DNA of 64,000 nucleotides, taken from the IMG/VR virus record IMGVR_UViG_3300035156_000206, positions 62,001 through 126,000 of that record, one strand, 5' to 3'. Positions 225-49,504 of the stretch are shown piece after piece. The notes under the pieces are model-generated. The model was not told the DNA's origin. It saw only the letters and a list, made by a program, of their open reading frames with translations, and did not search any database. Within the stretch, counting starts at the first letter, position 1. Each line of letters opens with the position of its first letter. The translations under genes and the position numbers were made by a program.

Positions 225-1862
225 ATGAACACCATCGAAACCAAAATGAACACCATTGCAGCATCAGTCCGTCACGGATTTGAATCCATTCAAGACCAAA
301 TCCAATCACTGCGCGGTGCATTGACAAGCGACTACAACGTTGCTCTTGATACCGATAGCTACAAACCATCGCACTTCCTGCAGTACCCGCCTAACACGGA
401 ATACGTGTTCTCGTACGTCGAAGCTCGTGGATCGAGCGACAAGCCGTCGTCGAAGATCATGAAGTCCTTGGAAAACTACCTAACGCCAGAGATGCTGAAG
501 CTGTTCAAGGCAGAGAATACCACTCAGCCATTCAACTTCACACTGATGTTCGGTCTCCAGTACATCAACAAAATGTACCTGAGCAAGCGCGTCACCAAAG
601 AAATGGTCGATTACGCTGCCAAGGAATGGAAAGCTCACGGCGAGCCATTCAACTACGACGGTTGGATGTACATTGTCAATGAGCTGGAAGGCAAGTTGCC
701 AGTTCGCATTCGTGCAGCCAAAGAGGGAGCCATCATCCCTCTCAAGAACGCGCTGATCACAGTTGAGAACACCGATCCCAAATGCTTCTGGCTGACTTCG
801 TACATTGAGCCAGCAATCCTCCGCGTATGGTATGGCATCACTGTTGGTACACTCAGTTGGACCATCAAGCAGATCATTGCTGCATACCTGCGCAAGAGCT
901 CAGATACCATGGATGGCCTGCTATTCAAGCTGCACGACTTCGGCTCACGTGGCGTCAGCTCGTACGAAAGTGCGGGCATTGGTGGTGCTGCTCACTTGGT
1001 CAACTTCATGGGCAGTGACACAATGCGTGCCATCCAGGTGCTGAAAGAGATCTACAATGTGGGCGAGGATGAAATGCCTGCATACTCGATCCCAGCTGGT
1101 GAACACAGTTCGTTCACTTCATGGCGCAAGGAATTCGAGAAAGAAGCTTACCGCAACATGATCGTCCAGTTTGGTAAGCCAGGCGCCTTGTTTGCTGCAG
1201 TGTCTGACTCGTACGACATCTTCAATGCAGTCGACAATATCTGGGGCAAAGAGCTGAAAGACGAACTGATTGCATCCGGTGCCACCGCAGTCATTCGCCC
1301 TGACAGTGGCGAACCAAAGGACATCGTCCTCAAAGTTGTGCAACTGCTGGACAAGAACTTCGGTTCGACCATCAACAGCAAGGGATACAAAGTGTTGCAC
1401 CCTTCAGTGCGTGTCATCCAAGGGGATGGCATTAACCTGGATAGCGTTAGCGAAATCTACGACACGCTGCTGGCTGCTGGCTATAGTGCAGACAACGTCG
1501 CCCTGGGAATGGGTGGTGGACTGCTGCAAATGGTCAATCGTGACACATTGCAGTTCGCAATGAAGTGCTCGGCTGCAAAGGTTGCTGGCGAATGGGTTGA
1601 CGTATACAAAGACCCAATCACCGACAGTGGCAAGCGCAGCAAGCGTGGCCGTGTTGGTCTGTTCCAGAACACGGTAACCAGCGAATATGCCACCATTCGC
1701 CTGGATGAAGTCACAGAGCTGAATGGAGAATTCGAGCACAAGGGCGAGATCTACATCGATGCGATGGACACCGTATTTGAGAATGGTGAAGTGCTTGTCG
1801 ATGAAAAGCTGGATGTCATCCGGGCACGATCGAACGATCACTACTTTATCGTCAGCCGTTAA
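225..1862 (+). CDS. nadV: Nicotinamide phosphoribosyltransferase (NAMPT)
   Basis: DTDSYKPSH, HDFGSRG, SIPAGEHS, VSDSYD, IRPDSG, VIQGDG, GMGGGLLQ..RDT motifs; SD AAGGAG. Confidence 0.95.
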   Translation: MNTIETKMNTIAASVRHGFESIQDQIQSLRGALTSDYNVALDTDSYKPSHFLQYPPNTEYVFSYVEARGSSDKPSSKIMKSLENYLTPEMLKLFKAENTTQPFNFTLMFGLQYINKMYLSKRVTKEMVDYAAKEWKAHGEPFNYDGWMYIVNELEGKLPVRIRAAKEGAIIPLKNALITVENTDPKCFWLTSYIEPAILRVWYGITVGTLSWTIKQIIAAYLRKSSDTMDGLLFKLHDFGSRGVSSYESAGIGGAAHLVNFMGSDTMRAIQVLKEIYNVGEDEMPAYSIPAGEHSSFTSWRKEFEKEAYRNMIVQFGKPGALFAAVSDSYDIFNAVDNIWGKELKDELIASGATAVIRPDSGEPKDIVLKVVQLLDKNFGSTINSKGYKVLHPSVRVIQGDGINLDSVSEIYDTLLAAGYSADNVALGMGGGLLQMVNRDTLQFAMKCSAAKVAGEWVDVYKDPITDSGKRSKRGRVGLFQNTVTSEYATIRLDEVTELNGEFEHKGEIYIDAMDTVFENGEVLVDEKLDVIRARSNDHYFIVSR

Positions 1863-1867
1863 GAACC

Positions 1868-1893
1868 AGAGAGCCCGCAAGGGCTCTCTTTTT
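1868..1893 (+). terminator. Rho-independent terminator
   Basis: AGAGAGCCC-GCAA-GGGCTCTCT followed by T tract. Confidence 0.9.
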
Positions 1894-1906
1894 ATCTGGA
1901 GCTCCC

Positions 1907-2059
1907 ATGCTATCCTTTCTTGGTAATATTGCTGGACTGTTGTGTTTGATGATTTTTATGTTTACAATCTTTCCTGCGATCACTATATTACAGATGACAT
2001 ACGTTTTCCTGTTCTATGCATGGGAAGAGATCGAATACTACTGGCGCAAGTACACCTAA
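1907..2059 (+). CDS. Small membrane protein, 50 aa (not in ORF track)
   Basis: Manual translation MLSFLGNIAGLLCLMIFMFTIFPAITILQMTYVFLFYAWEEIEYYWRKYT; fills the gap; hydrophobic. Confidence 0.55.
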   Translation: MLSFLGNIAGLLCLMIFMFTIFPAITILQMTYVFLFYAWEEIEYYWRKYT

Positions 2060-2075
2060 CTAACTGGACACAAAA

Positions 2076-2543
2076 ATGAAGCCTTTTAAAATCTCCGAGA
2101 CCTCCTGGCACTACCGACTCACCCTGCAATTCTACAGGGACACTAACCGATGCTACGACTTCTGCTCATACGCGCGGCGGGTGTTCTGGTCTATCCTGAT
2201 CGCCACCGTATTCCTAGTCATTGGGTTGTACCTGTTGTTCTGCCCACTTGACCTCGGTTACTTCATCTACCTCCAAATTACCGAAGGCGGGTACAAACCA
2301 GGTGGGCCAGCATTGATTGCAATGGTCGTGCTTATTTTAGGTACGATCATATTCACTTTTAATTACCTGTACGATCGGCACAGGATCTGGAAGAATGACA
2401 GGGCTAACAAGAAGTACGCGCAGGCAATGAAAGCACGAGGTGAGCATGTAGTGCCTGTACCAAAAGAGCCAGGCTTCTTGTCTACATGGTACAGCACATA
2501 TCGTGGCAAGTTCTGCATGAACATCGAATACACATCGGAGTAA
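2076..2543 (+). CDS. Hypothetical membrane protein, two TM helices
   Basis: Two hydrophobic segments; operon context. Confidence 0.7.
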   Translation: MKPFKISETSWHYRLTLQFYRDTNRCYDFCSYARRVFWSILIATVFLVIGLYLLFCPLDLGYFIYLQITEGGYKPGGPALIAMVVLILGTIIFTFNYLYDRHRIWKNDRANKKYAQAMKARGEHVVPVPKEPGFLSTWYSTYRGKFCMNIEYTSE

Positions 2544-2547
2544 CACC

Positions 2548-3381
2548 ATGATCAAATCTTTTTACATCGTCAGGAAACTGAACGGTCCTTCCTCAGATGC
2601 TGTTGAATCGGTAGTCTCGGACATTGAGCGGTTCGCCGATAAGCATGACATCGACTTGGCAGATGACCTTTTGGATTGCACCGAGGATACGCTATTCATT
2701 GCAATCGGTGGCGACGGCACTGTCATCCACGCTGCTAAGCTGGCTTTGGATCACTCTGCCTCGGTGCTCGGGTTCAATCTGGGCAAGGTTGGCTTCTTGG
2801 CCGACTTTGAGACCAAGAACGTAGCTGCCACACTGCATGCTGCGTACGAAGGGCTGTTAGCCGAAGACGAACGCACTGTAATTGAGATCAAGGCGGGAGA
2901 GTTTTCATATCTCGCCCTCAATGACTTTGTGCTGTCTGCCAAGTTTTCAGACACCACACTGTCATATGACCTGTTTGTTGATCAGCACTTTGCTGGATCA
3001 CACACCGCAAATGGCGTGATCGTGTCCACTCCCACCGGTTCAACTGCATATGCTTTGTCAGTTGGTGGCTCGATCATCATGCCTACAGGCGCGGACGTAC
3101 TTCAAGTTGTGCCAATTGCAGCACAAACGTTGACATCCCGGCCACTGATCGTGCCAGCTGAACCCGGTGTATCGATCAAATTCCCGTACAGTTCCAACCG
3201 GCCAGTTACACTTCGAGCAGATGGCCAACAAGTTCGAGAGTATGGTGCCGATGGTAGTTGTGATCAGACGTACTATGATACCATTACCATTTCTCCATTG
3301 TTCAAGAAGGTCAAGCTGCTGCATCACGACAACTGGAACCACTTCGATGTGCTGAACAAAAAGCTCAACTGGAACAAGTGA
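2548..3381 (+). CDS. nadK: NAD kinase
   Basis: GGDGT, NLGKVGFL, LND, GVIVSTPTGSTAYALSVGG and ADG motifs. Confidence 0.95.
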   Translation: MIKSFYIVRKLNGPSSDAVESVVSDIERFADKHDIDLADDLLDCTEDTLFIAIGGDGTVIHAAKLALDHSASVLGFNLGKVGFLADFETKNVAATLHAAYEGLLAEDERTVIEIKAGEFSYLALNDFVLSAKFSDTTLSYDLFVDQHFAGSHTANGVIVSTPTGSTAYALSVGGSIIMPTGADVLQVVPIAAQTLTSRPLIVPAEPGVSIKFPYSSNRPVTLRADGQQVREYGADGSCDQTYYDTITISPLFKKVKLLHHDNWNHFDVLNKKLNWNK

Positions 3382-4352
3382 TGGATATCATTGATGAACG
3401 CATCTCCTCCCTGATCAACCTGAGCCGAGAGTTTCAGCTTGAGTTGACACAAAGTATTACTGAGCACGGTGATCGGGAACGGTTAGCACGTGCACAGAGA
3501 GCAACCACGATTGGAGTGGAGATAGAAGTGCGGTTTAGTTCGTACTTCCCTGGCTTGTTCAAGCAGTTCGGGTTGGACGAACATTCGTATGAGTCGTTAT
3601 CGGCATACGACAAGTCCAGGCTAACACTCCTCACAAATGAAGCAGAACAGCCACTGCAGAAGAACCTCAAGCGGACCGTTCTTTGTGGTGTACCTAAAGG
3701 GAAGGACCGTTACTGGGAATTTGCCAATCGTCCCACATACCATCCGTACACCTTATCAGAAGAGGTGTTTCTGCTGAAGCGTGCTAATCTGATACCGTAC
3801 AATCAAAAGCACTCGCTCCATATCACCGTGGGTGGACTTCCATTTGGCACGGATGCAGGGATCCTCCTAATGATATTGGAAATGCTTGGATACACGTCTA
3901 AAGAGCGTTTGTTGAGTGGCATCAATCCGGATAAAGCTATCAGTTGGGGACGGAAGGGTCGAGGCGGGATGCGTAGGCGTACCACTGACTTGGAATTTGG
4001 GTACACGGAAGCGGTGGAGCTACGGACTTTAGAGATGCCTAAGGACCATGCTCGGTTTGAAGAATTGTTGTACATCACCTGGTTCCTGGCTGAAACGATT
4101 CGTAGGCCTGATCTTCGTGACTCGTGGCGCGCGGTAAGAAGGGTGGCAGTAGAGCTGGCGGACGCTTACAACATTGATGCCTCATGTAATTGGGGTCCCG
4201 GCTTTGAAAATGTTGACAAATGGACTAAACTAGCAGATAGTATCACCTCTATGGATAATACCCCATTGTGGCGAGTGGTCAAAGAAGTGATCAACTACCA
4301 GGATAAACTTTCATCCAAAAACTACTACCTGCGAGACTCAATCTCCTGGTAG
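3378..4352 (+). CDS. Putative amidoligase / COOH-NH2 ligase fold protein
   Basis: TIGVEIE, WEF, HSLHIT and VELRT motifs resemble the glutamine synthetase-like amidoligase superfamily; start overlaps nadK stop. Confidence 0.5.
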   Translation: MMDIIDERISSLINLSREFQLELTQSITEHGDRERLARAQRATTIGVEIEVRFSSYFPGLFKQFGLDEHSYESLSAYDKSRLTLLTNEAEQPLQKNLKRTVLCGVPKGKDRYWEFANRPTYHPYTLSEEVFLLKRANLIPYNQKHSLHITVGGLPFGTDAGILLMILEMLGYTSKERLLSGINPDKAISWGRKGRGGMRRRTTDLEFGYTEAVELRTLEMPKDHARFEELLYITWFLAETIRRPDLRDSWRAVRRVAVELADAYNIDASCNWGPGFENVDKWTKLADSITSMDNTPLWRVVKEVINYQDKLSSKNYYLRDSISW

Positions 4353-5469: not shown

Positions 5470-5874
5470 ATGGAGCACAGATTGGATAGTAACACAAAAA
5501 TAATCGCTACGGCCGACGAGGTCAACCAAAATGGTCGAAGGTACCTCCACTCAACTCTCGTTGAGATAGTGAACAGCCATGGCATGCGGGAAGTAATGGG
5601 AATGATTGACTCAGGAGGCACATCCCCATCATTCTCCGTTGACATCTCTCGTGTTTCTCACATTGTAAATAACCTTCGGATGGAAGGCAACCATCTCGTT
5701 GGTGACGTGAAGGTAATTCGTTCACCAGCTGGCGACATGCTCAACTCCCTGATGACAGCAAACGTCGATGTGCAATACACTCTATCAGGGTGTGGCAACG
5801 TCGAGATGATTGATGGCATCCGAACCATCACCAATTACCAACTTCGCAGTATTGATGTATCACCACTCAAATAG
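5470..5874 (+). CDS. T4 gp21-like prohead protease paralogue lacking catalytic His and Ser
   Basis: A..VNQNGRRY, SRVSH, GDVKVIRSPAG, IDV match the gp21/U9 pattern; GELxH becomes GMIDS, SSRG becomes TLSG. Confidence 0.7.
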   Translation: MEHRLDSNTKIIATADEVNQNGRRYLHSTLVEIVNSHGMREVMGMIDSGGTSPSFSVDISRVSHIVNNLRMEGNHLVGDVKVIRSPAGDMLNSLMTANVDVQYTLSGCGNVEMIDGIRTITNYQLRSIDVSPLK

Positions 5875-5881
5875 GAACTAA

Positions 5882-6106
5882 ATGGATAACCAACACCAAA
5901 AAATCAAGGGATACCGTGAACTCTCACAGGTAGAAATCGACGCTATGAACATCATCAAGGAACATGGCGTCAAGCTGGGCGTACTAATTGACAACCTCGA
6001 GATGATTGAGGGAATCGATAAGCGCTGGCTGGCCATGGCAAAGAGTGACCTGCAAAAAGGCATCATGTTTGCTGTTCGCTCTGTTGCCCAACCAACTACA
6101 TTCTAA
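5882..6106 (+). CDS. acb2: Anti-CBASS cyclic-oligonucleotide sponge Acb2
   Basis: MDNQHQKIKGYRELSQVEIDAMN..RWLAMAKSDLQKGIMFAVRSVAQPTTF closely follows the Acb2/Vs.4 pattern. Confidence 0.92.
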   Translation: MDNQHQKIKGYRELSQVEIDAMNIIKEHGVKLGVLIDNLEMIEGIDKRWLAMAKSDLQKGIMFAVRSVAQPTTF

Positions 6107-6910: not shown

Positions 6911-8137
6911 ATGAACGAGCGTCAAATCCAACTGTTTTCACACTTAAAGAACCTCGTCGCAACGACTGAAGTGTTCCTTACAAAAATCCACCAACTCGAT
7001 GACTGTTTCTTCCAGGTATTTGACTACCGCCTGGCTCGATACTCTGACTTCCTGCTGCCTGATGCGCGGGAAGCACGTGGTATCATGTTCGAAGTTGACC
7101 GTGATGGTATGCCTCTGCGGTTGGCTTGCTGGATGCCTTCCAAGTTCTTCAACCTGAACGAAAATCCAATGACGATGGACCTCGACCTGTCTGATGCTAA
7201 CATCAGCGGTGTGATGGAGAAGCTTGATGGTTCAATCATCTCGACGATGATGCACAAAGGCAAGATGATCCTGAAGTCGAAGACCTCCCTGAGCTCAGAG
7301 CACGTCGCAGTGGCACAAGCATACCTCGAAAAGAACTCGTACTTCCGTGAGATCCTAGAATACCCAACAAAGAACGGCTATTCAGTTCACATGGAGCTGA
7401 CAAGTCCCGACCTGCGCATCGTGCTGGGCTACCCAGAAGTAAAGCTGACCATACTGTCGATGCGTCGTCTGTCCGATGGTGCAATGGTGAATCGTCATAA
7501 CTTCTACGATCACTTCCCATGTGATTACCGTGATGGCTTCCAACTTGATCAATGGGTCAAAGATATGGACCCAATTCAGTTTGCTGGTAAGGGCATCCCA
7601 TTTGATAACCAAGTGACTTTGTTCAAGCTGCGAGGCGTCGATCACAATGATACCATGTACGTATCGAAGTTCATTGATGCCATCAAAGCAATGGTAGGCG
7701 TGGAGGGCTACATTGTCCGATTGGTTAATGGTGAACACATCAAGATCAAGTGCGATTGGTACTGTGCATTGCATCACACCAAGGACTCAATCTCTGCACC
7801 CCGCCGTTTGTTTGAATGCATTCTGAATGGTGCTGCTGATGACCTGAAGGCTATGTTTGCAGTTGATCCAATTACGTGTGCACGCATCGTGGAAATGGAA
7901 GACAAGGTTGTTGCAAAATATAACTCGCTTGTCAACAAAGTTGAAACGTTCTACGATAGCAATCGCTCGCTCGATCGTAAGTCATACGCGATTGCAGCTA
8001 CCGCAGAAAAAGAAGACAACCTGATGGGCTTGAAAATGGCTTTGTATTTGGGCAAGACCAACGACTACAAAGAGTTCTTCTTGAAGCACCCAGAGATGTT
8101 TGGCATCAATGCAAAGGATGAAGGTTTCCCAGAATGA
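6911..8137 (+). CDS. rnlA: T4 Rnl1-type RNA ligase
   Basis: KFFNLNE, EKLDGS adenylation motif, EGYIV, KIKCDWY..LH. Confidence 0.92.
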   Translation: MNERQIQLFSHLKNLVATTEVFLTKIHQLDDCFFQVFDYRLARYSDFLLPDAREARGIMFEVDRDGMPLRLACWMPSKFFNLNENPMTMDLDLSDANISGVMEKLDGSIISTMMHKGKMILKSKTSLSSEHVAVAQAYLEKNSYFREILEYPTKNGYSVHMELTSPDLRIVLGYPEVKLTILSMRRLSDGAMVNRHNFYDHFPCDYRDGFQLDQWVKDMDPIQFAGKGIPFDNQVTLFKLRGVDHNDTMYVSKFIDAIKAMVGVEGYIVRLVNGEHIKIKCDWYCALHHTKDSISAPRRLFECILNGAADDLKAMFAVDPITCARIVEMEDKVVAKYNSLVNKVETFYDSNRSLDRKSYAIAATAEKEDNLMGLKMALYLGKTNDYKEFFLKHPEMFGINAKDEGFPE

Positions 8138-10209: not shown

Positions 10210-11346
10210 ATGTCAATGCATCAAGGCTACGTGTGGGATCTCGAAGTACCGCGCCGGATCGGCGATGCCAAGGTGTACATTGTTGGTGGATGGGTCCGAG
10301 ACAAGTTCATGGGTTGTCCATCACAGGACAAGGACTTCCTGGTCGTGGGTGGCACTCATGAACTGATGATCGAGCATGGTTACAAGCAAGTTGGTTTGGA
10401 CTTTCCTGTATACTTGCATCCAGAATCCGGTGATGAGTACGCACTCGCTCGCACTGAACGCAAGACTGGGCCCGGTTACGGTGGCTTCAGTACTGACAGC
10501 TCCCCTACTATTACAGTAGAAGAAGATCTGATGCGCCGTGACTTGACGATCAATGCGATGGCATTGGACCTCGAGACGGGTGAACTTATCGATCCGTGTG
10601 GTGGCCGCCACGACATGAACCGGACGTTCTTGCGCCACACAAGTGATGCATTCATGGAAGATCCAGTTCGCATCCTCCGTACGGCACGATTCGCTGCCCG
10701 CTACAACTTCAACGTTCACAAAACAACTAACGACTTCATGCGTGGCATGGTACTTGCGGGTGCCATGAACGAATTGGAGCCACATCGCGTATGGGCGGAA
10801 ATGTCACGCGGCCTGATGGAACGCAACCCACGCCAACTGTTTCAAGTCCTCGATGACTGTGAAGCACTGCGGGCAATGGAGCATCCGTGGGTTGGTGGCG
10901 TATACGCATCTGGCATCTGGATGACTGGTTACCCACTCAGCCCTCTTACCCTCCCTCAACGGTTCGCATTGATCTCCGAGCACTTCAGCCCAGAAGACTT
11001 GAAGAAGGCCCGTATTCCTACAGATTGCGCGCGGTTGAGTACAATCCTGCACGAATGGAAACACAGCGTTCCATTATATGATCAGGCAACTTCAGACACC
11101 AAGTTGAGGATGTTGGCCGGAGTAGGAGCAATTGGCAAAGATCGTGCCACTGATTTGTTCCCAAGATTCATCAGCACATTCTTGGCATGGGGTGATACAC
11201 GGTTTGATCAATTTCGTATTCCACAGATTGATCGCATGCAAACCCATGCCAATCACATTAACCTCCTTGTGCCACCAGCAGATCTCCCAGTTAAGCGGAT
11301 CCCTGAGTGGATGCTCACATCAAAGCGGGAGATTGTTCGTGGATGA
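10210..11346 (+). CDS. cca: tRNA nucleotidyltransferase (CCA-adding enzyme), no HD domain
   Basis: VGGWVRD, DKDF, DLMRRDLTINAMA, EDPVRILRTARFAAR. Confidence 0.93.
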   Translation: MSMHQGYVWDLEVPRRIGDAKVYIVGGWVRDKFMGCPSQDKDFLVVGGTHELMIEHGYKQVGLDFPVYLHPESGDEYALARTERKTGPGYGGFSTDSSPTITVEEDLMRRDLTINAMALDLETGELIDPCGGRHDMNRTFLRHTSDAFMEDPVRILRTARFAARYNFNVHKTTNDFMRGMVLAGAMNELEPHRVWAEMSRGLMERNPRQLFQVLDDCEALRAMEHPWVGGVYASGIWMTGYPLSPLTLPQRFALISEHFSPEDLKKARIPTDCARLSTILHEWKHSVPLYDQATSDTKLRMLAGVGAIGKDRATDLFPRFISTFLAWGDTRFDQFRIPQIDRMQTHANHINLLVPPADLPVKRIPEWMLTSKREIVRG

Positions 11347-13740: not shown

Positions 13741-14469
13741 GTGATTCGTTTGTTAGCACTCCCCTTGGCAGTCGCGTTGGTTGCCCCAGCTCAGGCACAG
13801 TCTTTTGACAAGTGCAAGAAGTTCTTCATCAATGGCTATGTGACGGATTTCGTCAAGCCTCCTCATGGTCAGCTCAAAGACCTGTGCTTCGATTCATTCG
13901 CAGTACTCTATTCAGGCCAAACCAAGACAGCAGTGTTCGTTGTTGAGCGCCTCAACAAGGCTCAACTCGAAGACGCTTCGGACGAAGAGCGATCCAACAA
14001 GTTCTATGAAGAAGCCCGTTTGCCATCTGCATACCGGGCTACCCTTGCTGACTACAAGGGACAAGCTGGCGAACAGATGTACGACCGTGGCCACATGGCT
14101 CCAGCGGGCGATATGCCGAATGTGCAATCCATGGCTCAGAGCTTTTCCTTGGCCAACATGGTGCCACAAGCGTCGAAAAACAATCGTGGCCCATGGCGCA
14201 GCCGTGTCGAAATGGCAACGCGCAAGTATGTGATGCGCGCCAAAGGTGATGTGATCGTCTTCACTGGTCCTGTATTCGAAACGGTACAGACTCTTGGTCC
14301 AAACAAAGTGTGGATCCCAACGCACCTGTTCAAACTGGTGTATGATGTTGAAACAGGACGCTCGTGGGCACATTGGATTGAAAATACCAACGCCGCAAAG
14401 GCTGGTCCTCCAATTACTCACGAGGAACTGATGAAACGTACAGGCATTCGGTTCATTCCACAAGAATAA
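13741..14469 (+). CDS. Secreted DNA/RNA non-specific endonuclease (NucA/EndoG family)
   Basis: Signal peptide MIRLLALPLAVALVAPAQA; DRGHMAP active site; SFSLANMVPQ..NNRG.W. Confidence 0.92.
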   Translation: MIRLLALPLAVALVAPAQAQSFDKCKKFFINGYVTDFVKPPHGQLKDLCFDSFAVLYSGQTKTAVFVVERLNKAQLEDASDEERSNKFYEEARLPSAYRATLADYKGQAGEQMYDRGHMAPAGDMPNVQSMAQSFSLANMVPQASKNNRGPWRSRVEMATRKYVMRAKGDVIVFTGPVFETVQTLGPNKVWIPTHLFKLVYDVETGRSWAHWIENTNAAKAGPPITHEELMKRTGIRFIPQE

Positions 14470-23242: not shown

Positions 23243-24280
23243 ATGTCAAATGTAATCAACTCGCACACGTTTCACGATTTCCAATACCTCGACCTACTGA
23301 GCGATGTGTACAACAATGGCCGCAAAAAAGAAGACCGTACAGGGACAGGCACCATCTCTGTCTTTGGACGTGAGATGCGGTTTGATATCCGCAATAACAT
23401 CATCCCTGTTCTCACTACCAAGAAGATGTACCTTCCAGCTCTCTTCCATGAGATCATCTGGTATCTGTCAGGCACAGGCAACATCAAGTACCTGCGCGAC
23501 AATGGCATCCGCATCTGGAATGAATGGGCTGACGAGAATGGCGATCTGGGTCCTGTATACGGATATCAATGGCGTAACTGGCCTGGACAGCTCAAAATGC
23601 AGCCAACCCATTCAACAACAGATCAATGGGAGACATTAACTTCTGCTGACCTGACTAGTGAATTTTCATTTCACGAAGGTTTCTTGAAGCAAGAAAGCAT
23701 CGACCAGATTGCGGAAGTGATCAAGACTCTCAAAACGAATCCTGATTCCCGTCGTATCATGGTGAATGCATGGAACGTTGGTGAGCTGGATGAAATGAAA
23801 CTGCCTCCATGCCACTTCACATTCCAGTTCTACACAGAAGAGATGACTCTCGATGAGCGCATCTGGTGGTGGTCACGTGAGAGTGGCCTCAATGGCAGCA
23901 GCGTTACTACCATAGGAACCCACGAAGGTCTGGATTTCTTGGCTGTTCCACGTCGTTATCTGAGCTGCAAGATCACCCAACGTTCTGCAGATATGTTCTT
24001 GGGTGTGCCATTCAACATCGCTCAGTACAGCATGCTGACAGCAATGATTGCACAAGTAACCGGTATGGCTGCACGTGAACTGATCTGGAGTGGTGGTGAT
24101 TGTCACATCTATCTGGACCACTTTGAACAAGTCAAAGAGCAATTGCGCCGTGCACCTGTGGCATCCCCAATTCTGGTACTGAATAAGACTGTTGACAATA
24201 TTGACAATTTCGTGTATAGTGATTTCAGCTTGAAGGATTATCGCTCACACGGAGCCATTGCAGCAAAAGTGGCCGTGTAA
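23243..24280 (+). CDS. thyA: Thymidylate synthase
   Basis: RTGTGT, LGPVYG.QWR, LPPCH, QRSADMFLGVPFN, GDCHIY; two insertions. Confidence 0.97.
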   Translation: MSNVINSHTFHDFQYLDLLSDVYNNGRKKEDRTGTGTISVFGREMRFDIRNNIIPVLTTKKMYLPALFHEIIWYLSGTGNIKYLRDNGIRIWNEWADENGDLGPVYGYQWRNWPGQLKMQPTHSTTDQWETLTSADLTSEFSFHEGFLKQESIDQIAEVIKTLKTNPDSRRIMVNAWNVGELDEMKLPPCHFTFQFYTEEMTLDERIWWWSRESGLNGSSVTTIGTHEGLDFLAVPRRYLSCKITQRSADMFLGVPFNIAQYSMLTAMIAQVTGMAARELIWSGGDCHIYLDHFEQVKEQLRRAPVASPILVLNKTVDNIDNFVYSDFSLKDYRSHGAIAAKVAV

Positions 24281-24663: not shown

Positions 24664-25077
24664 ATGTCAGAAAATACCGCTCAACTGTCCTGCAATCAAG
24701 TACGGGAATTAATGATGGCTTGTTTGGTCAAAGACCCGGCGGTGGAATCATTTCCGATCACCGAAGGGCTCGTCCGCAAGTATATGTTCCATCCTGAACG
24801 GATCCAGGAACACAAGAAGGATATCTACAACCTTTTGATGGAACTGGATCCTACGTTCCGTAAAAGTGTTGGCGGTGGGTGGTCATTCCTGCAAATGCCT
24901 GCAAATAAGGATGGGGAGCAGTGGGGCGGACAGATTAACGCTGAAGAGTTGCTTGTCCTCGGCATTGCAGCTGGCCTGATGGAGTACGGGATGCCCCGCG
25001 AAATGTGGAACATTCTGCCAGGCGGTGTACCTTATGTAGTATTCAACGACGATGTTACCTTTAAGGAACCACAATGA
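24664..25077 (+). CDS. Conserved hypothetical protein
   Basis: FHPERI..GGGWSFL...G..W...E.L..LGIA. Confidence 0.8.
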   Translation: MSENTAQLSCNQVRELMMACLVKDPAVESFPITEGLVRKYMFHPERIQEHKKDIYNLLMELDPTFRKSVGGGWSFLQMPANKDGEQWGGQINAEELLVLGIAAGLMEYGMPREMWNILPGGVPYVVFNDDVTFKEPQ

Positions 25078-27080
25078 TTGATCGAGAAGTACAACAACTG
25101 ATTGCGGAACTGCAAGAACTGGATAAGTTAATTGGTTCGGCCGTTACCAGCGATGACTTGCCAGTTACGGCATTAGACACCATCATCAATGTTGCTAGAA
25201 TCGCAGATGATGCGTACGAGAACGGTGACGATCCGCTGTTCAGCGATGCATTGTATGATGCAATTCGCGCCCATGTGCGGGCGAACGCCACTCTTGCTGC
25301 TATTGAATACAGCGATACTGTGGGCAGTGACGTGCGCGGCGGTAAGATTGCACTGCCAAATGCTATGGGATCGCTCACCCAAGCATATGATCAAGGAGAT
25401 CTGGTGGCGTGGGCACAGAAGCATCGCTTGCCTCCAGAAACAGAACTGATCATTACCGAGAAGGAAGACGGCATGAGCTCGTCTGTCCACAACGGTAGTA
25501 CGGGTGAGTTCCGAATCGCCTACAGCCGTGGCAATGGCACGGAAGGTGCTGATATGTCCCGCCATATCAAGCATATTAAAAGCATGCCGAAGAAGGTTAC
25601 AGCAGGACTGGAAGTGCGGGCAGAGATCATCATCTCCAATCCCAACTTCGAAATTCTGAAGACCAAGATCTTCCGTAGCGACGGTTCGGTATACAAGAAC
25701 CCACGCAACATGATCTCGGGCCTGATGAACAAATCCGAAATTGACCCAATCGCATATCAATACATCGATGCGATCGTCTACCACGACTGGAACGAGACAG
25801 ACGAGTCCAAAGAAGAGCAACTGAAACGCTTTACCAAGCTTGGCTACCAGGTACCATACTGGGAAAAGATCACGGTTGCTGACCTGTCAGATAAGTTCCT
25901 GACCGAGCGCCTCAATCACATCCGCGACACATCGAAATACCTCGTCGACGGTATTGTGATCGAAGTCAACGATGCCAAGTTGCGTAACCGCATCAACCCA
26001 AGCAAAGCCACTCTGAATCCAGAGTACGCTCGCAAATACAAGGTTGCTGATGCGGCAAACAACGCGATTGCAACGGTGGATTATGTCGAGAATCGTGTTT
26101 CCAAACACGGTTACATCATTCCGCGCGTCCACTTCCATCCGATCCCTTTGGCAGGCGTTACTGTCACCCACGCGACGGCTCACAACTACGCGTACGTGAT
26201 TGAAAACGGTATCTCGCCCGGTGCCAAGGTTCGCATTACTCGCAGTGGCGATGTGATTCCTTATATCATTGACGTCGTCGAGAAGGGTCCATACACGGAC
26301 GAAGACTTCGACGAGCAGTTGCAAGATGTTGGTGAATACACCTGGACGGTGAATGCTAAAGGCCAGCGCGTACATGCTGTGTTGACTGGTGACCACAAGA
26401 ACATCGGCATCAAACAGGCAGCATCGTTCTTCGAAGCCATTGGCGTTGAAGGTCTGAAGCTGGGTAACGTCACACGCCTCTGTGAATGTGGGTTCGATAC
26501 CATCGAAAAGATCGTCAAGGCATCGGCCGATGAACTGGCTTTTGCTATCGGTTCACCTTCGGTCGCTGATGAGATCTTCACCAGCATCCACAAGCAACTG
26601 AAGCTGCAGACACTTCCGCAGTTCATGGGTGCTTCTGGCAAGTTCGGCCGTGGCATGGGCAAGCGCAAGATCCAGCAGGTATACGACGTGTTCGGCGATA
26701 GTCTGCTGGATGTCACGGTGGATCAGCTGCTGCCCGTCGACAAATTCAATGTCAAGACTGCAACCAAGTTCGTCAGCGGTCTCCCCGTCTATCTTGAATT
26801 CTATGAGTCCATTGCGGACTATGTGGAGTTCGTGGAAAAGAAGGTTGTCGAGGGCGGTGCACTGAATGGCCAAGTGTTTGTGTTCACAGGGTTCCGCAAT
26901 AAGGCACTCGAAGAACGCATCACTGCAGCAGGCGGCGAAGTTGCTGCCAGTTACTCCAAAAAGGTGACGACGTTGATTGCGGCTGACCCAGACGAGCGCA
27001 GTACAAAGCTGGATAAGGCACGAAAAGATCGCTGCAAAGTGATTGGCCTGGTAGATGTGGACTTGCTTTTCGAAGAGTAA
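25074..27080 (+). CDS. ligA: NAD-dependent DNA ligase, no Cys4 zinc finger, C-terminal BRCT
   Basis: SL, KEDG, SRGNG, EVRAE, RN..SG, DGIVI, A.KY, RSGDVIP, FVFTGFR. Confidence 0.93.
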   Translation: MIDREVQQLIAELQELDKLIGSAVTSDDLPVTALDTIINVARIADDAYENGDDPLFSDALYDAIRAHVRANATLAAIEYSDTVGSDVRGGKIALPNAMGSLTQAYDQGDLVAWAQKHRLPPETELIITEKEDGMSSSVHNGSTGEFRIAYSRGNGTEGADMSRHIKHIKSMPKKVTAGLEVRAEIIISNPNFEILKTKIFRSDGSVYKNPRNMISGLMNKSEIDPIAYQYIDAIVYHDWNETDESKEEQLKRFTKLGYQVPYWEKITVADLSDKFLTERLNHIRDTSKYLVDGIVIEVNDAKLRNRINPSKATLNPEYARKYKVADAANNAIATVDYVENRVSKHGYIIPRVHFHPIPLAGVTVTHATAHNYAYVIENGISPGAKVRITRSGDVIPYIIDVVEKGPYTDEDFDEQLQDVGEYTWTVNAKGQRVHAVLTGDHKNIGIKQAASFFEAIGVEGLKLGNVTRLCECGFDTIEKIVKASADELAFAIGSPSVADEIFTSIHKQLKLQTLPQFMGASGKFGRGMGKRKIQQVYDVFGDSLLDVTVDQLLPVDKFNVKTATKFVSGLPVYLEFYESIADYVEFVEKKVVEGGALNGQVFVFTGFRNKALEERITAAGGEVAASYSKKVTTLIAADPDERSTKLDKARKDRCKVIGLVDVDLLFEE

Positions 27081-32239: not shown

Positions 32240-32755
32240 ATGACCTTACTTGAACTATCCCCTCCAGTTAATACCACAGGCACATATGCTGCCGTAACCT
32301 TCTCTCCAAAGACAATCGCTAAGCTTATACGCTTTTGCGAGGAAAACGGCGTAAAGAACGTTTTAAACGCTGACAAATTCCATACAACGCTAATTTACAG
32401 TCGTAAAGAAATGCCAGATTATAAAGCAGCTGGTGACCTAAAAACCAAACTAATCGGTGAGCCTGAAGAGCTGTTGATCTGGAAGACGCGAAGCGAAGAC
32501 AAAGATAAGAAGCCCTCCAACTGCTTGGTATTGAAGTACAAATGTCCGGCCCTGGTGGCACGTCACAATCAGCTGATGAAAGAACATGAAGGCACCTACG
32601 ACTTTGATGAGTTTACTCCACACATCACTCTGTCGTACAATATCGGTGATGATTCGATCGACCATCTCCAAGAGAAGCTGAAGGAGTTTGGGGAGATCGA
32701 GATTGACCACGAGTATACCGAGAAACTAGATCTAAACTGGGCAACGAAAAAATGA
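32240..32755 (+). CDS. acb1: Anti-CBASS nuclease Acb1 (T4 gp57B-like 2H phosphodiesterase)
   Basis: GTYAAV, FHTTLIYSR, LVL....L..RH..L...GTYDFDEFTPHITLSY: two HxT motifs. Confidence 0.9.
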   Translation: MTLLELSPPVNTTGTYAAVTFSPKTIAKLIRFCEENGVKNVLNADKFHTTLIYSRKEMPDYKAAGDLKTKLIGEPEELLIWKTRSEDKDKKPSNCLVLKYKCPALVARHNQLMKEHEGTYDFDEFTPHITLSYNIGDDSIDHLQEKLKEFGEIEIDHEYTEKLDLNWATKK

Positions 32756-33291
32756 TTAAACAACTGAAGGACGTCCACCTGCAAATGATTGTGGCGATGG
32801 ACGAAGGTGGTGGGATTGGTTATCAGGGGATGCTCCCTTGGCCAAAGAACACCAAGGACTTTAAATTTTTCCAGGAGAAAACAAAAGGCTCAATCGTAAT
32901 CATGGGCCGAAAGACATACGAAGAAATTGCACAAATTAATCAACAACGTGGCAAAAAGGACGGCCCACTTCTTCCCAATCGGGTGTCAATTGTCATCTCG
33001 AGTGAAGAAATTGTGAGCGCCTACGAAATTACTGTTGAAAAGTCTCTACTATCCGCTATACAATATCGTATAGAAGAAGATGATAAGCCGGTATTCATCA
33101 TAGGTGGCCTTCAGTTGTACACAGAAGCATTACCGTTTGTGAAGACGTTATATGTGACTGTGTTTAAGGGAACGTACCAATGTGATCGTTATCTTCCGAT
33201 TAAGTACCTTACACAGAACTTTGACATAGTAGAGGGTACGGATGAAAAAGACCTCTACTTCCTGAAACTGAACCGTGTAAAGAACTTGTAA
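32752..33291 (+). CDS. folA: Dihydrofolate reductase
   Basis: IVAMD..GGIG..G.LPW, D.K.F..KT, VIMGRKTYE, LPNR, FIIGG..LY. Confidence 0.95.
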   Translation: MIKQLKDVHLQMIVAMDEGGGIGYQGMLPWPKNTKDFKFFQEKTKGSIVIMGRKTYEEIAQINQQRGKKDGPLLPNRVSIVISSEEIVSAYEITVEKSLLSAIQYRIEEDDKPVFIIGGLQLYTEALPFVKTLYVTVFKGTYQCDRYLPIKYLTQNFDIVEGTDEKDLYFLKLNRVKNL

Positions 33292-47107: not shown

Positions 47108-49504
47108 TTATTGACAAGACTCGCAAGACTCTGGGTTCTCCAGACTACATACGATGATCTCATCATCCGTGTACTCCTTTTTAGGAGTTGGAACAGCGTC
47201 AACTGCTCCGGAGACCAACTTCTCTACACGCGTTCCAGCACGGCTACGCAGGTAGTAAGTCGTCTTCAGGCCAAGCTTCCACGCCTTCATGTACATTGAC
47301 GATGCTTTGCCAATGGTGCAATTTTCCATGAACAGATTCAGGCTCTGTGATTGATCGATATAACGGCCACGAACAGCAGCGAGCGTCATGATCGGCATCA
47401 TCGAATATTCCCATACCGTACGGTGCTTACGCGCCAGACGATCAGGAATGCCACGGATGTTCTGTACTGATCCATCAGCAGCAATGATCTGTGCGCGTAC
47501 TTCTGCTGTCCACATGCCGATTGCTTTCAGGTCACGTACCAGTTCAGCACTCACCTGTGTGAATTCGCCTGACAATGTCTGACGAGAGAACAGATTCGAG
47601 ATGGTTGGTTCTGTGCATTCGCCCACACCAACGATCGAAGCAATCGTAGCTGTTGGAGCAATTGCGATACAGAGACTGTTGCGAGTACCGTGTGTACGGA
47701 TGTCTTCGCGCAGTTGTTCCCAATTCATGTCACCAATCACAGGCGGTGCAAACTCACCCTTGCCCAGCAGTTCGTCTTGCAGATCAAATTGCAGCTTACC
47801 TTCAGCCAGACGTGAGATCTTGAAGTTCGGGAACGGGCCAAACTCTTTTGCCATTTCAACCGATGCCTTCATTGCGTGGTAGTAGATGAAGCCGTGCACA
47901 TCGTTGACCAGCTGCAGAGTCTCAGGATCATCAAATACCAAATCCATCTTGTGCAACATCTCTTGGGTACCCATTACGCCGAGACCAACAGGACGCCACG
48001 CGTGGTTGGAGTTCTTTGCTTCGTGACGTGGGTAGAAGTTCTTGTCGATGACACGGTCTAGACCACGCATTGCTTGACGCACAACAACAGCCAAATCAGC
48101 CCAATTTACTGTACGGTCAGCATTGATGTAGGCACTCAGTACAATCGAGCCAAGGTTACATACTGCAATGTTGTCCTTGTCAGTAACTTCCAGGATCTCG
48201 GTGCACAGATTTGAGCTGTGTACGGTGTGACCATTGGTTTCTGTGACTTGATTGCAGAGAGCGTTGGAACGGTCTTTGAAGTTCATCCAACCATTGCCTG
48301 TCTCGCATAGAGTCTTCATCATGCGGAACCAAATAGTCTGCGCAGGAATACGCTTATACCATTTTGGCTTCTTCTCCATAGCTTCGTACTTCGCTTCCAG
48401 AGCCTCATATGCAACATCAAAGCGATCGCCCCATAAGTCGTTCAGAGCCATCACTTCTGGGTCAACGGTGGAGAACAATGACCAGTCACCTTTTGCTTCG
48501 ACGCGGCGCATGAACAGATCAGGTACCCAGTTAGCCAGATTCAGATCGTGAGCACGACGCTTTGGATCGCCAGTGTTGTCACGCAGTTCTAGGAATTGGA
48601 TCAAGTCGCCGTGCCAGGTTTCGAGGTATACAGCTGCGGCACCCTTACGTTTCCCGCCCTGATTTACAGCATTCACCAAAGCGTCTTGCGCATGGATGAA
48701 TGGAATAATTCCGTTGGATAAGCCGTTTGTGCCCTTGATCAGTGAGTCAGTCGAGCGTACGCGCGAGAATGGCAGACCGATACCACCAGCCCACTTTGAC
48801 AGCAAACCAACAGCTTTGTAGCCATCGTAGATTGCATCCAGATCATCATCTGGCGAAGGCAACAGATAGCAGGAGCTCATCTGTGTGTGCATCGTACCAG
48901 AGTTGAACAGTGTTGGCGTCGATGTGAAGTACTTGTGCTGTGCCAGGATGGTGTAGAATGCGATTGTTTCTTGCACATCACCTGTGTAGATGCCGGCTGC
49001 TACGCGCATCAGGAAGTACTGTGGCGATTCCAATACTTTGCGGGTCTCAGGATGCTTCAGCAAGTAACGATCGTACACCGTCTTGAGACCAAAATACTCA
49101 TACTTGTCATCCAGGGAAGAATCGATCGAAGCGTTCAGCTTACGAGCGTTCTTTTTGACAAATGCTGCAACTTCGGCACTGACTAGGTCAACACTGTGTG
49201 ATGCTGCGATACACTGGGAGAAAGATTGAATCTCTTGGTTTTGTACTTCTTTGTTGATGACATTCATCAAGATGCGTGCACAGAACTTGCTGTGATCAGG
49301 CTCTTCGTTTGTCAGCCACAGGGCTTTATCAATCGACAGTTCATCGATCTGTTGAGTTGTAGCACCATCATATAGCCCACCAATGACTTTAGTGGCGATG
49401 GTGAACGGATCAACGTTCAGGCCTACGGCAACCTTGGTCATCGACTTGACAATCTTGTTCAGATTGGCTTCTTCCTTGGTACCGTTTCTTTTTACTACAT
49501 GCAT
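47108..49504 (-). CDS. nrdA: Ribonucleotide reductase class I alpha subunit with ATP cone
   Basis: VVKRNG, TPTLFNSG, SSCY, SNLCTEI, CNLGS, APTAT, C-terminal CESCQ; no intein. Confidence 0.96.
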   Translation of the reverse strand: MHVVKRNGTKEEANLNKIVKSMTKVAVGLNVDPFTIATKVIGGLYDGATTQQIDELSIDKALWLTNEEPDHSKFCARILMNVINKEVQNQEIQSFSQCIAASHSVDLVSAEVAAFVKKNARKLNASIDSSLDDKYEYFGLKTVYDRYLLKHPETRKVLESPQYFLMRVAAGIYTGDVQETIAFYTILAQHKYFTSTPTLFNSGTMHTQMSSCYLLPSPDDDLDAIYDGYKAVGLLSKWAGGIGLPFSRVRSTDSLIKGTNGLSNGIIPFIHAQDALVNAVNQGGKRKGAAAVYLETWHGDLIQFLELRDNTGDPKRRAHDLNLANWVPDLFMRRVEAKGDWSLFSTVDPEVMALNDLWGDRFDVAYEALEAKYEAMEKKPKWYKRIPAQTIWFRMMKTLCETGNGWMNFKDRSNALCNQVTETNGHTVHSSNLCTEILEVTDKDNIAVCNLGSIVLSAYINADRTVNWADLAVVVRQAMRGLDRVIDKNFYPRHEAKNSNHAWRPVGLGVMGTQEMLHKMDLVFDDPETLQLVNDVHGFIYYHAMKASVEMAKEFGPFPNFKISRLAEGKLQFDLQDELLGKGEFAPPVIGDMNWEQLREDIRTHGTRNSLCIAIAPTATIASIVGVGECTEPTISNLFSRQTLSGEFTQVSAELVRDLKAIGMWTAEVRAQIIAADGSVQNIRGIPDRLARKHRTVWEYSMMPIMTLAAVRGRYIDQSQSLNLFMENCTIGKASSMYMKAWKLGLKTTYYLRSRAGTRVEKLVSGAVDAVPTPKKEYTDDEIIVCSLENPESCESCQ

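What the first reader, a model, noticed from the sequence alone, without database searches (positions are those of the whole stretch)
225..3381. Phage NAD salvage extended to NADP: NAMPT plus NAD kinase
Seen: a full NAMPT and, 700 bp downstream, a full NAD kinase with all core motifs. Established: phage NAMPT with an NMNAT rebuilds NAD after depletion by defences such as Thoeris, DSR and TIR-CBASS (NARP2). Inference: NAD kinase is not part of described NAD-reconstitution pathways and could restore NADP(H) for the phage DHFR and RNR reduction chain, or move NAD into a pool that NADases spare. No NMNAT is visible in this window.
Basis: partly seen in the sequence, partly recalled or inferred. 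Interest (0 to 1): 0.6.

Follow-up and report, generated by a model that had tools for sequence, protein, structure and literature searches.

The report
Phage NAD salvage module with NAD kinase
A soil-crust jumbo phage carries, next to its known two-enzyme NAD-rebuilding pathway, a phage-specific NAD kinase; this three-gene arrangement is conserved across many uncultured giant phages and would extend cofactor rebuilding from NAD to NADP, which has not been described or tested.

Summary
Window 225-1862 encodes a full NAMPT and 2548-3381 a 277-aa NAD kinase with an intact GGDG, NE/D and TPTGSTAY core and a confident NADK fold.

A NadM-Nudix gene ends about 840 bp upstream of NAMPT, so the phage has a complete NARP2 plus NADK.

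The NADK belongs to a deep, well-supported phage-type clade of 63 sequences. Many sit on 75-360 kb contigs.
- In 13 of 16 distinct contexts NAMPT lies upstream on the same strand within 10 kb, and in 10 of them within 2.4 kb.
- Two more contexts have NAMPT further off on the contig.
- In the nearest relative NAMPT has been swapped for a 34%-identical version, while NadM and NADK stayed about 70% identical.
- The reverse does not hold: none of the 80 closest NAMPT loci has a NADK.

The phage also encodes DHFR, ThyA, class I RNR and thioredoxin.

Best reading: an active NAD(H) kinase that extends NARP2 to NADP(H). The enzyme's activity and any benefit to the phage are untested. It is a new variant of a known kind.

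The parts
225..1862 (+). NAMPT (nicotinamide phosphoribosyltransferase, NadV), 545 aa; the first about 35 residues are an N-terminal extension or an over-called start
   Evidence: Pfam NAMPT_N + NAPRTase; NCBIfam PRK09198 602 bits > 405. 45-51% identical to jumbo-phage NAMPTs of Ralstonia, Xanthomonas and Stenotrophomonas phages.
1868..1889 (+). Terminator-like hairpin (9-bp stem, 6 GC pairs, GCAA loop, T-run) directly after the NAMPT stop; suggests nadK is in a separate downstream transcription unit
   Evidence: scan; sequence read. Promoter-like sites downstream (window 1961-1989 and 2065-2092) are not above chance.
1907..2059 (+). Small hydrophobic ORF (50 aa); no family match; may or may not be a gene
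2076..2543 (+). ORF155, predicted membrane protein; its stop lies 4 nt before the nadK ATG
   Evidence: phrog_944 'membrane protein', 72 bits; 34% ortholog in L004 at the same position
2548..3381 (+). Phage-type NAD kinase (277 aa), GGAG Shine-Dalgarno 8 nt upstream; clade signature GxHxANG (Asn155 where cellular NADKs have Asp); Thr153 at the acceptor-specificity position
3381..4352 (+). ORF324 (323 aa from the ATG), start overlaps the nadK stop (TGATG); glutamine-synthetase / carboxylate-amine-ligase-like fold, function unknown; recurs near NADK in three other lineages
5882..6106 (+). Acb2/Tad1 hairpin-domain protein (74 aa), candidate cyclic-nucleotide sponge (anti-CBASS/anti-Thoeris type); context, not part of the enzyme module
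   Evidence: Pfam PF24729 62.9 bits > 27; 72% ortholog in L004
23243..24280 (+). Thymidylate synthase ThyA (context: makes dihydrofolate for the NADPH-dependent DHFR)
   Evidence: PF00303 361 bits
25074..27080 (+). NAD-dependent DNA ligase (context: phage NAD+ consumer)
   Evidence: PF01653 103 bits in this frame
32752..33291 (+). Dihydrofolate reductase (context: direct NADPH consumer)
   Evidence: PF00186 102 bits; ORF limits; generic DHFR, far below all resistance-type cut-offs
47108..49504 (-). Ribonucleotide reductase large subunit (context: reduced through thioredoxin and, ultimately, NADPH)
   Evidence: PF02867 581 bits; phage thioredoxin at genome 254022-254291

Best explanation
The locus is a three-enzyme NAD(P) reconstitution module. 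NadM-Nudix (just upstream of the window) and NAMPT form a complete NARP2: nicotinamide + PRPP gives NMN, and NMN + ATP gives NAD+. The Nudix half probably recycles ADP-ribose. The downstream 277-aa protein is an active member of a phage-specific NAD kinase clade that phosphorylates the 2'-OH of NAD+. Because it has Thr where enterobacterial NAD+-only enzymes have Arg-175, it probably also accepts NADH and is less subject to NAD(P)H feedback. The result is that nicotinamide released when NAD+ and NADP+ are destroyed, or simply the excess NAD+ that NARP2 makes, is carried through to NADP(H). This sustains the phage's NADPH-dependent dNTP synthesis (DHFR/ThyA, RNR/thioredoxin) without depending on the host's tightly regulated NADK. 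Shown: gene identities, intact catalytic motifs, fold, conserved synteny, the clade structure, and the presence of the consumers. Inferred: catalytic activity, NADH acceptance, loss of feedback control, and the benefit during NADase-based defence.
For: (1) Identity and integrity of NADK.
(2) Complete NARP2 next to it. No Prs/Adps-like gene was found.
(3) Conserved order NadM-Nudix > NAMPT > NADK on phage-size contigs, with NADK identity down to 36-41%. In 13 of 16 distinct phage-type NADK contexts NAMPT is upstream on the same strand within 10 kb. Two more (L013, L021) have it elsewhere on the contig.
(4) In the nearest relative (L004) NAMPT is only 34% identical while NadM is 72% and NADK 70%. 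The function was kept at this position while the gene was exchanged.
(5) Dependence is asymmetric: 0 of the 80 nearest NAMPT loci have NADK, and 69 of 80 have NadM.
(6) Other lineages show the same pairing. Phage Phosso has NADK about 5 kb from PnuC + NMNAT. All three L041-L044-group jumbo contigs searched (L041, L042, L044) carry both NADK and NAMPT.
(7) One lineage has a thioredoxin gene between NAMPT and NADK. This genome has DHFR, ThyA, RNR and Trx.
(8) Defence NADases also cleave NADP+, so rebuilding NAD+ alone leaves NADP+ to the host kinase.
(9) Thr153 aligns with EcoNADK Arg-175. R175T/G/Q/H mutants gain NADH kinase activity, and Gram-negative NADKs are inhibited by NADH/NADPH (PMC8553519).
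(10) An Acb2/Tad1-type domain protein lies 2.5 kb downstream, placing the module in a counter-defence neighbourhood.
Against: There are no biochemical or expression data: only one DNA run holds the sequence and none holds RNA. The NADK scores below every NCBIfam NADK equivalog cut-off (best 164.6 against 316). It replaces the conserved Asp (Ppnk Asp-189) that contacts the nicotinamide amide with Asn, although 80 of 80 cellular genes fetched with the same Asn are NADK homologs, including those of minimal endosymbionts. A terminator-like hairpin separates NAMPT from the nadK unit, so the two are probably not one operon. Co-occurrence is partly confounded by shared ancestry and by large genome size, since jumbo phages often carry NAMPT. 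The phage also encodes CoaD/CoaE, which fits general cofactor provisioning as well as it fits counter-defence. Most NARP2 phages manage without NADK.
Confidence: 0.55

Rival explanations
1. Defence-independent cofactor provisioning. The phage infects slow-growing or dormant soil-crust hosts and boosts late steps of several adenine-containing cofactors (NAD, NADP, CoA) to support a large replication programme. NADK is an ordinary auxiliary metabolic gene, and its linkage to NAMPT reflects pathway order only.
For: CoaD and CoaE both pass their equivalog cut-offs elsewhere in the genome. The source is a biocrust metagenome. NARP2 is reported to overproduce NAD+ constitutively even without NADase (PMC13728456). 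The phage has NAD+ and NADPH consumers of its own.
Against: The neighbourhood carries an Acb2/Tad1-type domain here and Acb1 in L011. NARP2 itself has a demonstrated counter-defence role. The two readings are not exclusive and share the same enzymology.
Confidence: 0.3
2. Altered-substrate or signal-interference enzyme. The clade-wide Asp-to-Asn change at the nicotinamide-contacting residue marks a kinase that acts on something other than NAD(H), such as NaAD or an ADPR-derived immune signal. Alternatively, it shifts NAD+ to NADP+ so that TIR sensors cannot make cADPR-isomer signals.
For: N155 is present in 58 of 63 phage-clade members, against Asp in 71 of 71 cellular and 4 of 4 second-lineage viral NADKs. 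All NCBIfam equivalog scores are below cut-off. TIR cleavage of NADP+ gives only nicotinamide + ADPPR and no cyclic signal.
Against: The same Asn occurs in cellular NADKs of 118 species genomes, including Riesia, Dasytiphilus and Ruthia, whose small genomes should hold a single essential NADK. All other catalytic and NAD-binding motifs are intact. The tight coupling to NAD+-producing enzymes fits NAD(H) as the substrate.
Confidence: 0.07
3. Sequestration. NADK hides NAD+ as NADP+, a pool that defence NADases do not touch.
For: None from tools; conceptually possible for a strictly NAD+-specific effector.
Against: SeThsA efficiently cleaves NADP+, and the AbTir/AaTir TIR domains use NADP+ as a substrate. 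No NADP phosphatase was identified next to nadK to return NADP+ to NAD+.
Confidence: 0.03
4. No functional link. NADK is a passenger gene that stays near NAMPT only through shared ancestry of one phage lineage.
For: A terminator-like hairpin lies between the genes. Most contexts come from one, albeit deep, clade.
Against: Order and strand are kept while NADK diverges to about 35% identity, intervening genes turn over and NAMPT itself is replaced. Phosso shows the same pairing with another type of salvage module.
Confidence: 0.05

Closest known systems
NARP2 (phage Nampt + Nmnat NAD+ reconstitution pathway; Osterman et al. 2024; KVP40 NadV/NatV)
   Same: NAMPT plus a bifunctional NadM-type NMNAT/Nudix encoded side by side in a large phage; no Adps/Prs-like gene.
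   Different: A third enzyme, NAD kinase, is conserved downstream. The preprint describing NARP2 contains neither 'kinase' nor 'NADP', and none of the 80 nearest NAMPT loci has NADK.
Bacterial ATP-NAD kinases (NadK/PpnK; P. aeruginosa 7MH7/7QVS, Salmonella 2AN1, M. tuberculosis Ppnk 1U0T)
   Same: Same two-domain fold (TM 0.80-0.85), with GGDG, NE/D and TPTGSTAY motifs.
   Different: 28-35% identity. The N-terminal domain is shorter (a median of 56 residues before GGDG, against 67). Asn replaces the conserved Asp (Ppnk Asp-189), and Thr replaces EcoNADK Arg-175. It forms a separate clade (SH-aLRT 99) and scores below all NCBIfam equivalog cut-offs.
NARP1 with an added phosphatase gene (three-gene extension countering aRES; summarised in PMC13728456)
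   Same: A precedent for a NAD-reconstitution pathway gaining a third, accessory enzyme gene.
   Different: Different pathway (Adps + Namat), different added activity (ADPR-1P phosphatase), and it acts upstream of NAD+, not downstream.
NARP3 (PnuC + NadR; PMC13464706) and Sinorhizobium phage Phosso
   Same: Phosso, a cultured 469-kb phage, has an annotated NAD kinase about 5 kb from a PnuC-type transporter and an NMN adenylyltransferase. This is another NADK-plus-salvage pairing.
   Different: A different salvage type. Phosso's NADK matches only residues 44-231 at 30% identity; it was not placed in the tree, so its clade is not established.
Cyanophage redirection of host metabolism towards NADPH for dNTP synthesis (pentose-phosphate genes, CP12; recalled from my own knowledge, not checked here)
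   Same: The same proposed end: more NADPH for phage nucleotide synthesis.
   Different: Those genes change the reduction state of an existing NADP pool. NADK would change the size of the pool.

Membership tests
NAD kinase (Pfam PF01513 + PF20143; EC 2.7.1.23) | Both Pfam domains above gathering score | tested here: met
   45.6 bits against 25.5 and 76.6 against 23.7
NAD kinase (Pfam PF01513 + PF20143; EC 2.7.1.23) | GGDG motif with the catalytic Asp | tested here: met
   G54-G55-D56-G57, invariant in all 138 aligned sequences
NAD kinase (Pfam PF01513 + PF20143; EC 2.7.1.23) | NE/D short motif and the Thr/Tyr of conserved region II (Ppnk Asn-159, Glu-160, Thr-200, Tyr-202; PMC8553519) | tested here: met
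   N125-D126 and T161-P-T-G-S-T-A-Y168 are present
NAD kinase (Pfam PF01513 + PF20143; EC 2.7.1.23) | Asp at the start of conserved region II (Ppnk Asp-189 / LmNADK1 Asp-150), which contacts the nicotinamide amide from the adjacent subunit | tested here: not met
   Asn155 here and in 58 of 63 clade members. The same Asn is found in NADKs of 118 cellular species genomes, and 80 of 80 fetched are NADK homologs, so it is an allowed variant.
NAD kinase (Pfam PF01513 + PF20143; EC 2.7.1.23) | NADK two-domain fold | tested here: met
   AF2 pLDDT 90.9; Foldseek TM 0.80-0.85, E about 1e-25, to 7QVS, 2AN1 and 4HAO
NAD kinase (Pfam PF01513 + PF20143; EC 2.7.1.23) | NCBIfam equivalog score cut-off | tested here: not met
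   Best model PRK01231 scores 164.6 bits against a cut-off of 316; all 18 models are below cut-off
NAD kinase (Pfam PF01513 + PF20143; EC 2.7.1.23) | Phosphorylates NAD+ (or NADH) to NADP(H) | not testable with these tools
   Needs an enzyme assay
NARP2 (Nampt + Nmnat, Osterman et al. 2024) | Nampt-clade phosphoribosyltransferase | tested here: met
   NAMPT_N domain plus the PRK09198 equivalog at 602 bits > 405
NARP2 (Nampt + Nmnat, Osterman et al. 2024) | Nmnat encoded in the same phage genome | tested here: met
   NadM-type CTP_transf_like + NUDIX frame at genome 60035-61387. Best bifunctional NMNAT/Nudix model scores 366 bits, just under its cut-off of 397; both Pfam domains are above cut-off
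NARP2 (Nampt + Nmnat, Osterman et al. 2024) | No Adps (Prs-like) partner, which would indicate NARP1 | tested here: met
   No Pribosyltran_N match in the 292-kb record, which is estimated 84% complete
NARP2 (Nampt + Nmnat, Osterman et al. 2024) | Restores NAD+ and rescues the phage from NADase defence | not testable with these tools
   Needs infection assays and metabolomics
Acb2/Tad1 sponge family | Acb2/Tad1 hairpin domain | tested here: met
   PF24729 62.9 bits > 27 for window 5882-6106. Ligand binding was not tested.

The most novel reading that the evidence does not exclude
The phage-type NADK is a dedicated counter-defence enzyme. It turns NARP2 into an 'NADP reconstitution pathway', rebuilding the NADP+ that SIR2/TIR effectors also destroy. 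By being feedback-insensitive and accepting NADH, it may also make NADPH directly. In the boldest version it also starves TIR sensors of the only substrate (NAD+) from which they can make cADPR-isomer alarm signals. This would show that NADP(H) depletion, not only NAD+ depletion, is a working part of abortive-infection immunity.
Probability: 0.3. Interest if true: 0.8.

Novelty: new variant of a known kind. Interest (0 to 1): 0.62.

Why it matters
NAD+-depleting defences are carried by about 7% of bacteria, and about 5% of phages carry NAD+ reconstitution pathways. All three described pathways (NARP1-3) stop at NAD+. A conserved, phage-specific NAD kinase sitting directly after NARP2 suggests that for some phages the limiting cofactor is NADP(H). 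This raises a directly testable question: do SIR2/TIR effectors stop phages partly by destroying NADP+? The locus also provides a compact candidate enzyme, possibly free of NAD(P)H feedback control, and a sequence signature (GxHxANG) for finding the module in viromes.

Tried and rejected
(1) Megablast of the first 8.2 kb of the window against 50,697 phage records gave no match, so no close cultured relative is available.

(2) A single-protein pattern scan of IMG/VR with the NADK found nothing. An alignment-based scan was needed.

(3) The second cytidylyltransferase-like frame (genome 44348-44752) was considered as a second NMNAT. I rejected this: it is CoaD (TIGR01510, 131 bits > 103) and sits next to a CoaE-domain protein.

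(4) The conserved upstream AAA_28 protein was considered as a NadR-type riboside kinase. Only a generic P-loop signal was found, so this is inconclusive.

(5) I first listed H193, P175 and R270 as phage-specific losses. Thermotoga NADK also has Gln at the 193 position, so I kept only D155N as notable. It was then shown to occur in cellular NADKs too.

(6) ORF324 gave no Pfam, PHROG, NCBIfam or PDB sequence match. Its fold match to glutamine synthetases is weak (TM about 0.3), so I assign no function.

(7) Sigma-70-like promoter sites are not above chance (9 found, 8.3 expected), so I make no promoter claim.

(8) No RNA run holds the locus, so expression could not be examined.

(9) No glutaredoxin, thioredoxin reductase, Tpt1 or Prs gene was found in the record.

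(10) Of the 30 NADK matches in the phage database, all but Phosso lie in unannotated fragments, bacterial-looking contigs or short prophage-size records. I judged these from the listing alone and did not count them as phage genes.

(11) Complex prediction and the large representative search were not used, because no binding claim or absence-of-relatives claim rests on them.
Full report
**Where the window lies.** The window is bases 62001-126000 of a 291,967-bp viral record, estimated 84% complete. Its only public holder run is a biocrust metagenome. No close relative exists among 50,697 deposited phage genomes.

**Observation.**
- Window 225-1862 (+) encodes a 545-aa NAMPT. It has Pfam NAMPT_N and NAPRTase, and the NCBIfam equivalog scores 602 bits against a cut-off of 405.
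- Window 2548-3381 (+) encodes a 277-aa protein with both NAD-kinase Pfam domains above threshold. Its best solved relative is P. aeruginosa NADK at E 3.5e-31.
- An AlphaFold model built on 35 homologs has pLDDT 90.9. It superposes on solved NADKs at TM 0.80-0.85.
- GGDG (54-57), NLGKVGFL, N125-D126 and TPTGSTAYALSVGG are all present.

**The missing NMNAT.** A search of the whole record for the cytidylyltransferase fold found a 450-aa frame at genome 60035-61387, with a probable ATG at 60176.
- It carries CTP_transf_like and NUDIX domains. It scores 366 bits on the bifunctional NMN adenylyltransferase/Nudix model, just under the cut-off of 397.
- It ends about 840 bp upstream of NAMPT on the same strand, with three small ORFs in between.
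- No Prs/Adps-like gene is present.
- The phage therefore has a complete NARP2 as defined by Osterman et al., that is Nampt + Nmnat, found in about 1.1% of phages.

**Local anatomy.**
- A strong terminator-like hairpin (window 1868-1889) follows the NAMPT stop.
- The next unit is a 50-aa hydrophobic ORF, then ORF155 (PHROG 'membrane protein'), then nadK, preceded by GGAG 8 nt upstream.
- ORF324 follows, and its ATG overlaps the nadK stop as TGATG.
- ORF324 has only ten homologs, all on phage-like contigs. Its confident model (pLDDT 86.7) resembles glutamine-synthetase-type carboxylate-amine ligases, but only weakly. Its role is unknown.
- An Acb2/Tad1 hairpin-domain protein lies at 5882-6106.

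**How unusual is a phage NADK?**
- NAMPT matches 2,015 of 50,697 phage records. NADK matches 30.
- Apart from Sinorhizobium phage Phosso (469 kb), those 30 are unannotated fragments, bacterial-looking contigs or short prophage-size records; I judged this from the listing and did not inspect them individually.
- In Phosso the NADK lies about 5 kb from a PnuC-type transporter and an NMN adenylyltransferase.
- In the searchable literature, no paper combines NAD kinase with Thoeris. The paper describing NARP2 contains neither 'kinase' nor 'NADP', and none of the phage NARP papers retrieved contains the term 'NAD kinase'.
- Viral ppnK appears only as passing mentions (one or two occurrences) in two virome papers, which I did not read.

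**A phage-type clade.**
- The word-index protein search returned about 50 proteins matching the query over its full length at 35-72% identity. Many sit on contigs of 75-315 kb. Cellular NADKs align only from about residue 45, at 33-38%.
- In a maximum-likelihood tree of 138 sequences, a 63-member clade holding all of these plus ten IMG/VR viral NADKs separates from the cellular sequences with SH-aLRT 99.
- Four other viral NADKs (L041-L044, contigs of 135-389 kb) form a separate group on the cellular side.

**Synteny.**
- Gene neighbourhoods from JGI, ENA, Logan, NCBI and IMG/VR show the order NadM-Nudix > NAMPT > NADK on one strand.
- tblastn over all fetched loci found NAMPT upstream within 10 kb in 13 of 16 distinct phage-type contexts. 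In 10 of these it is within 2.4 kb.
- L021 and L013 have NAMPT about 10 kb and 58 kb away. L011 and L024 could not be checked.
- NADK identity among these contexts falls to 34-41%, and the small genes between them turn over.
- In the nearest relative (L004) NadM is 72% identical and NADK 70%, but NAMPT only 34%. NAMPT was exchanged in place while the function was kept.
- In one lineage a thioredoxin gene sits between NAMPT and NADK.
- The dependence is one-way. Among the 80 viral loci with the most similar NAMPT, 69 have NadM nearby and none has NADK.

**Residues.**
- The clade keeps every catalytic motif but has the signature GxHxANG.
- Asn155 replaces an Asp that is invariant in the 71 cellular sequences sampled. 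By gap-free alignment to Salmonella NadK, N155 equals Asp-177 and T153 equals Arg-175.
- According to PMC8553519, the equivalent Ppnk Asp-189 reaches in from the neighbouring subunit. There it orients Tyr-202 and binds the nicotinamide amide.
- The same review names Arg-175 as the determinant of NAD+-only specificity. R175T/G/Q/H mutants gain NADH kinase activity, yeast NADH kinase Pos5p has Thr, and Gram-negative NADKs are inhibited by NADH/NADPH.
- To test whether Asn implies a different substrate, I scanned 185,579 species genomes for the Asn version of the motif. There were 118 matches, and all 80 fetched are NADK homologs without NAMPT nearby. They include Riesia, Dasytiphilus and Ruthia endosymbionts.
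- Asn is therefore rare but compatible with ordinary, essential NADK function.

**Consumers and context in this genome.**
- DHFR is at window 32752-33291 and ThyA at 23243-24280.
- The class I RNR large subunit is at 47108-49504, on the minus strand.
- Thioredoxin is at genome 254022-254291 and the NAD-dependent DNA ligase at window 25074-27080.
- No thioredoxin reductase or glutaredoxin was found.
- The phage also encodes CoaD and a CoaE-domain protein, so it invests in cofactor supply more broadly.

**Interpretation.**
- The simplest reading is an active NAD(H) kinase working downstream of NARP2 to keep up the NADP(H) pool.
- Two literature points sharpen this. SeThsA efficiently cleaves NADP+. 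TIR domains also cleave it, giving only nicotinamide and 2'-phospho-ADPR.
- NADase defences should therefore drain NADP+ as well. NARP2 alone would leave its resynthesis to the host kinase.
- A defence-independent provisioning role fits the CoA genes and the reported constitutive NAD+ overproduction by NARP2. It remains a serious rival and shares the same enzymology.

**Limits.**
- There are no activity or expression data.
- Co-occurrence counts are not corrected for shared ancestry or genome size.
- The record is incomplete, and the literature library excludes most subscription journals.

**Verdict.** This is a new variant of a known kind, NARP2 with a conserved phage-type NAD kinase.

Noticed in passing
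G000:C1:44225-46056 (- strand; outside the window, L001:1378-3209): Adjacent CoaD (pantetheine-phosphate adenylyltransferase, 131 bits > 103) and a 430-aa protein with a dephospho-CoA kinase domain (69.7 bits > 65.6): the last two steps of CoA synthesis, encoded by a phage.
   Followed up: partly
window 5882-6106 (+): A 74-aa Acb2/Tad1 hairpin-domain protein (Pfam 62.9 bits), a candidate cyclic-nucleotide sponge against CBASS/Thoeris. It lies 2.5 kb downstream of nadK and is conserved in relative L004.
   Followed up: partly
window 3381-4352 (+): ORF324 is translationally coupled to nadK (TGATG overlap). It has a confident model with a weak glutamine-synthetase/amidoligase-like fold and only ten homologs, all on phage-size contigs. 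It recurs near NADK in L004, L010 and L014. Function unknown.
   Followed up: partly
L004:7873-9390 versus window 225-1862: In the closest relative the NAMPT at the same position is only 34% identical, while the flanking NadM (72%) and NADK (70%) are orthologous. This is an in-place exchange of NAMPT.
   Followed up: yes
window 6911-8137 and 10210-11346 (+); L007:11374-11958; L006:18364-19368: An RNA-repair set lies downstream of the NAD module: T4-type RNA ligase 1 and a CCA-adding/poly(A)-polymerase-family enzyme. Relatives add the NAD+-dependent RNA 2'-phosphotransferase Tpt1 or an ADP-ribosylglycohydrolase.
   Followed up: no
L010:9674-9997 and L010:859-1620: In one phage lineage a thioredoxin gene sits between NAMPT and NADK, and a SIR2-domain gene lies about 8 kb upstream.
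   Followed up: no
L041-L044 (IMG/VR contigs of 135-389 kb) and L053 (Sinorhizobium phage Phosso, PV764938): There are other viral NADKs outside the window's immediate lineage: L041-L044 form a separate group on the cellular side of the tree, and Phosso's NADK was not placed in the tree. Each of the three L041-L044-group contigs searched (L041, L042, L044) also encodes an NAMPT-family gene, 76 kb or more from NADK. Phosso has NADK about 5 kb from PnuC + NMNAT.
   Followed up: partly
L134-L213 (genome contigs): Cellular NAD kinases with Asn in place of the conserved Asp (Ppnk Asp-189 position) exist in scattered lineages, including Treponema, Alistipes, Micrarchaeota and the endosymbionts Riesia, Dasytiphilus and Ruthia.
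   Followed up: partly
G000:C1:52435-53133 (+; L003:4435-5133): An AAA_28 P-loop protein is conserved upstream of the NAD module in relatives L006 and L007; in L007 it sits next to a histidine phosphatase. It could be a nucleoside/riboside kinase, but only a generic signal was found.
   Followed up: partly
window 5470-5874 (+): A 134-aa ORF resembles part of a T4-type prohead/head-maturation protease (PHROG 207, 45 bits; Pfam S77 below cut-off). It sits far from any structural gene block, so it may be a fragment or a repurposed domain.
   Followed up: no
window 13741-14469 (+): A DNA/RNA non-specific endonuclease (Endonuclease_NS, 143 bits).
   Followed up: no
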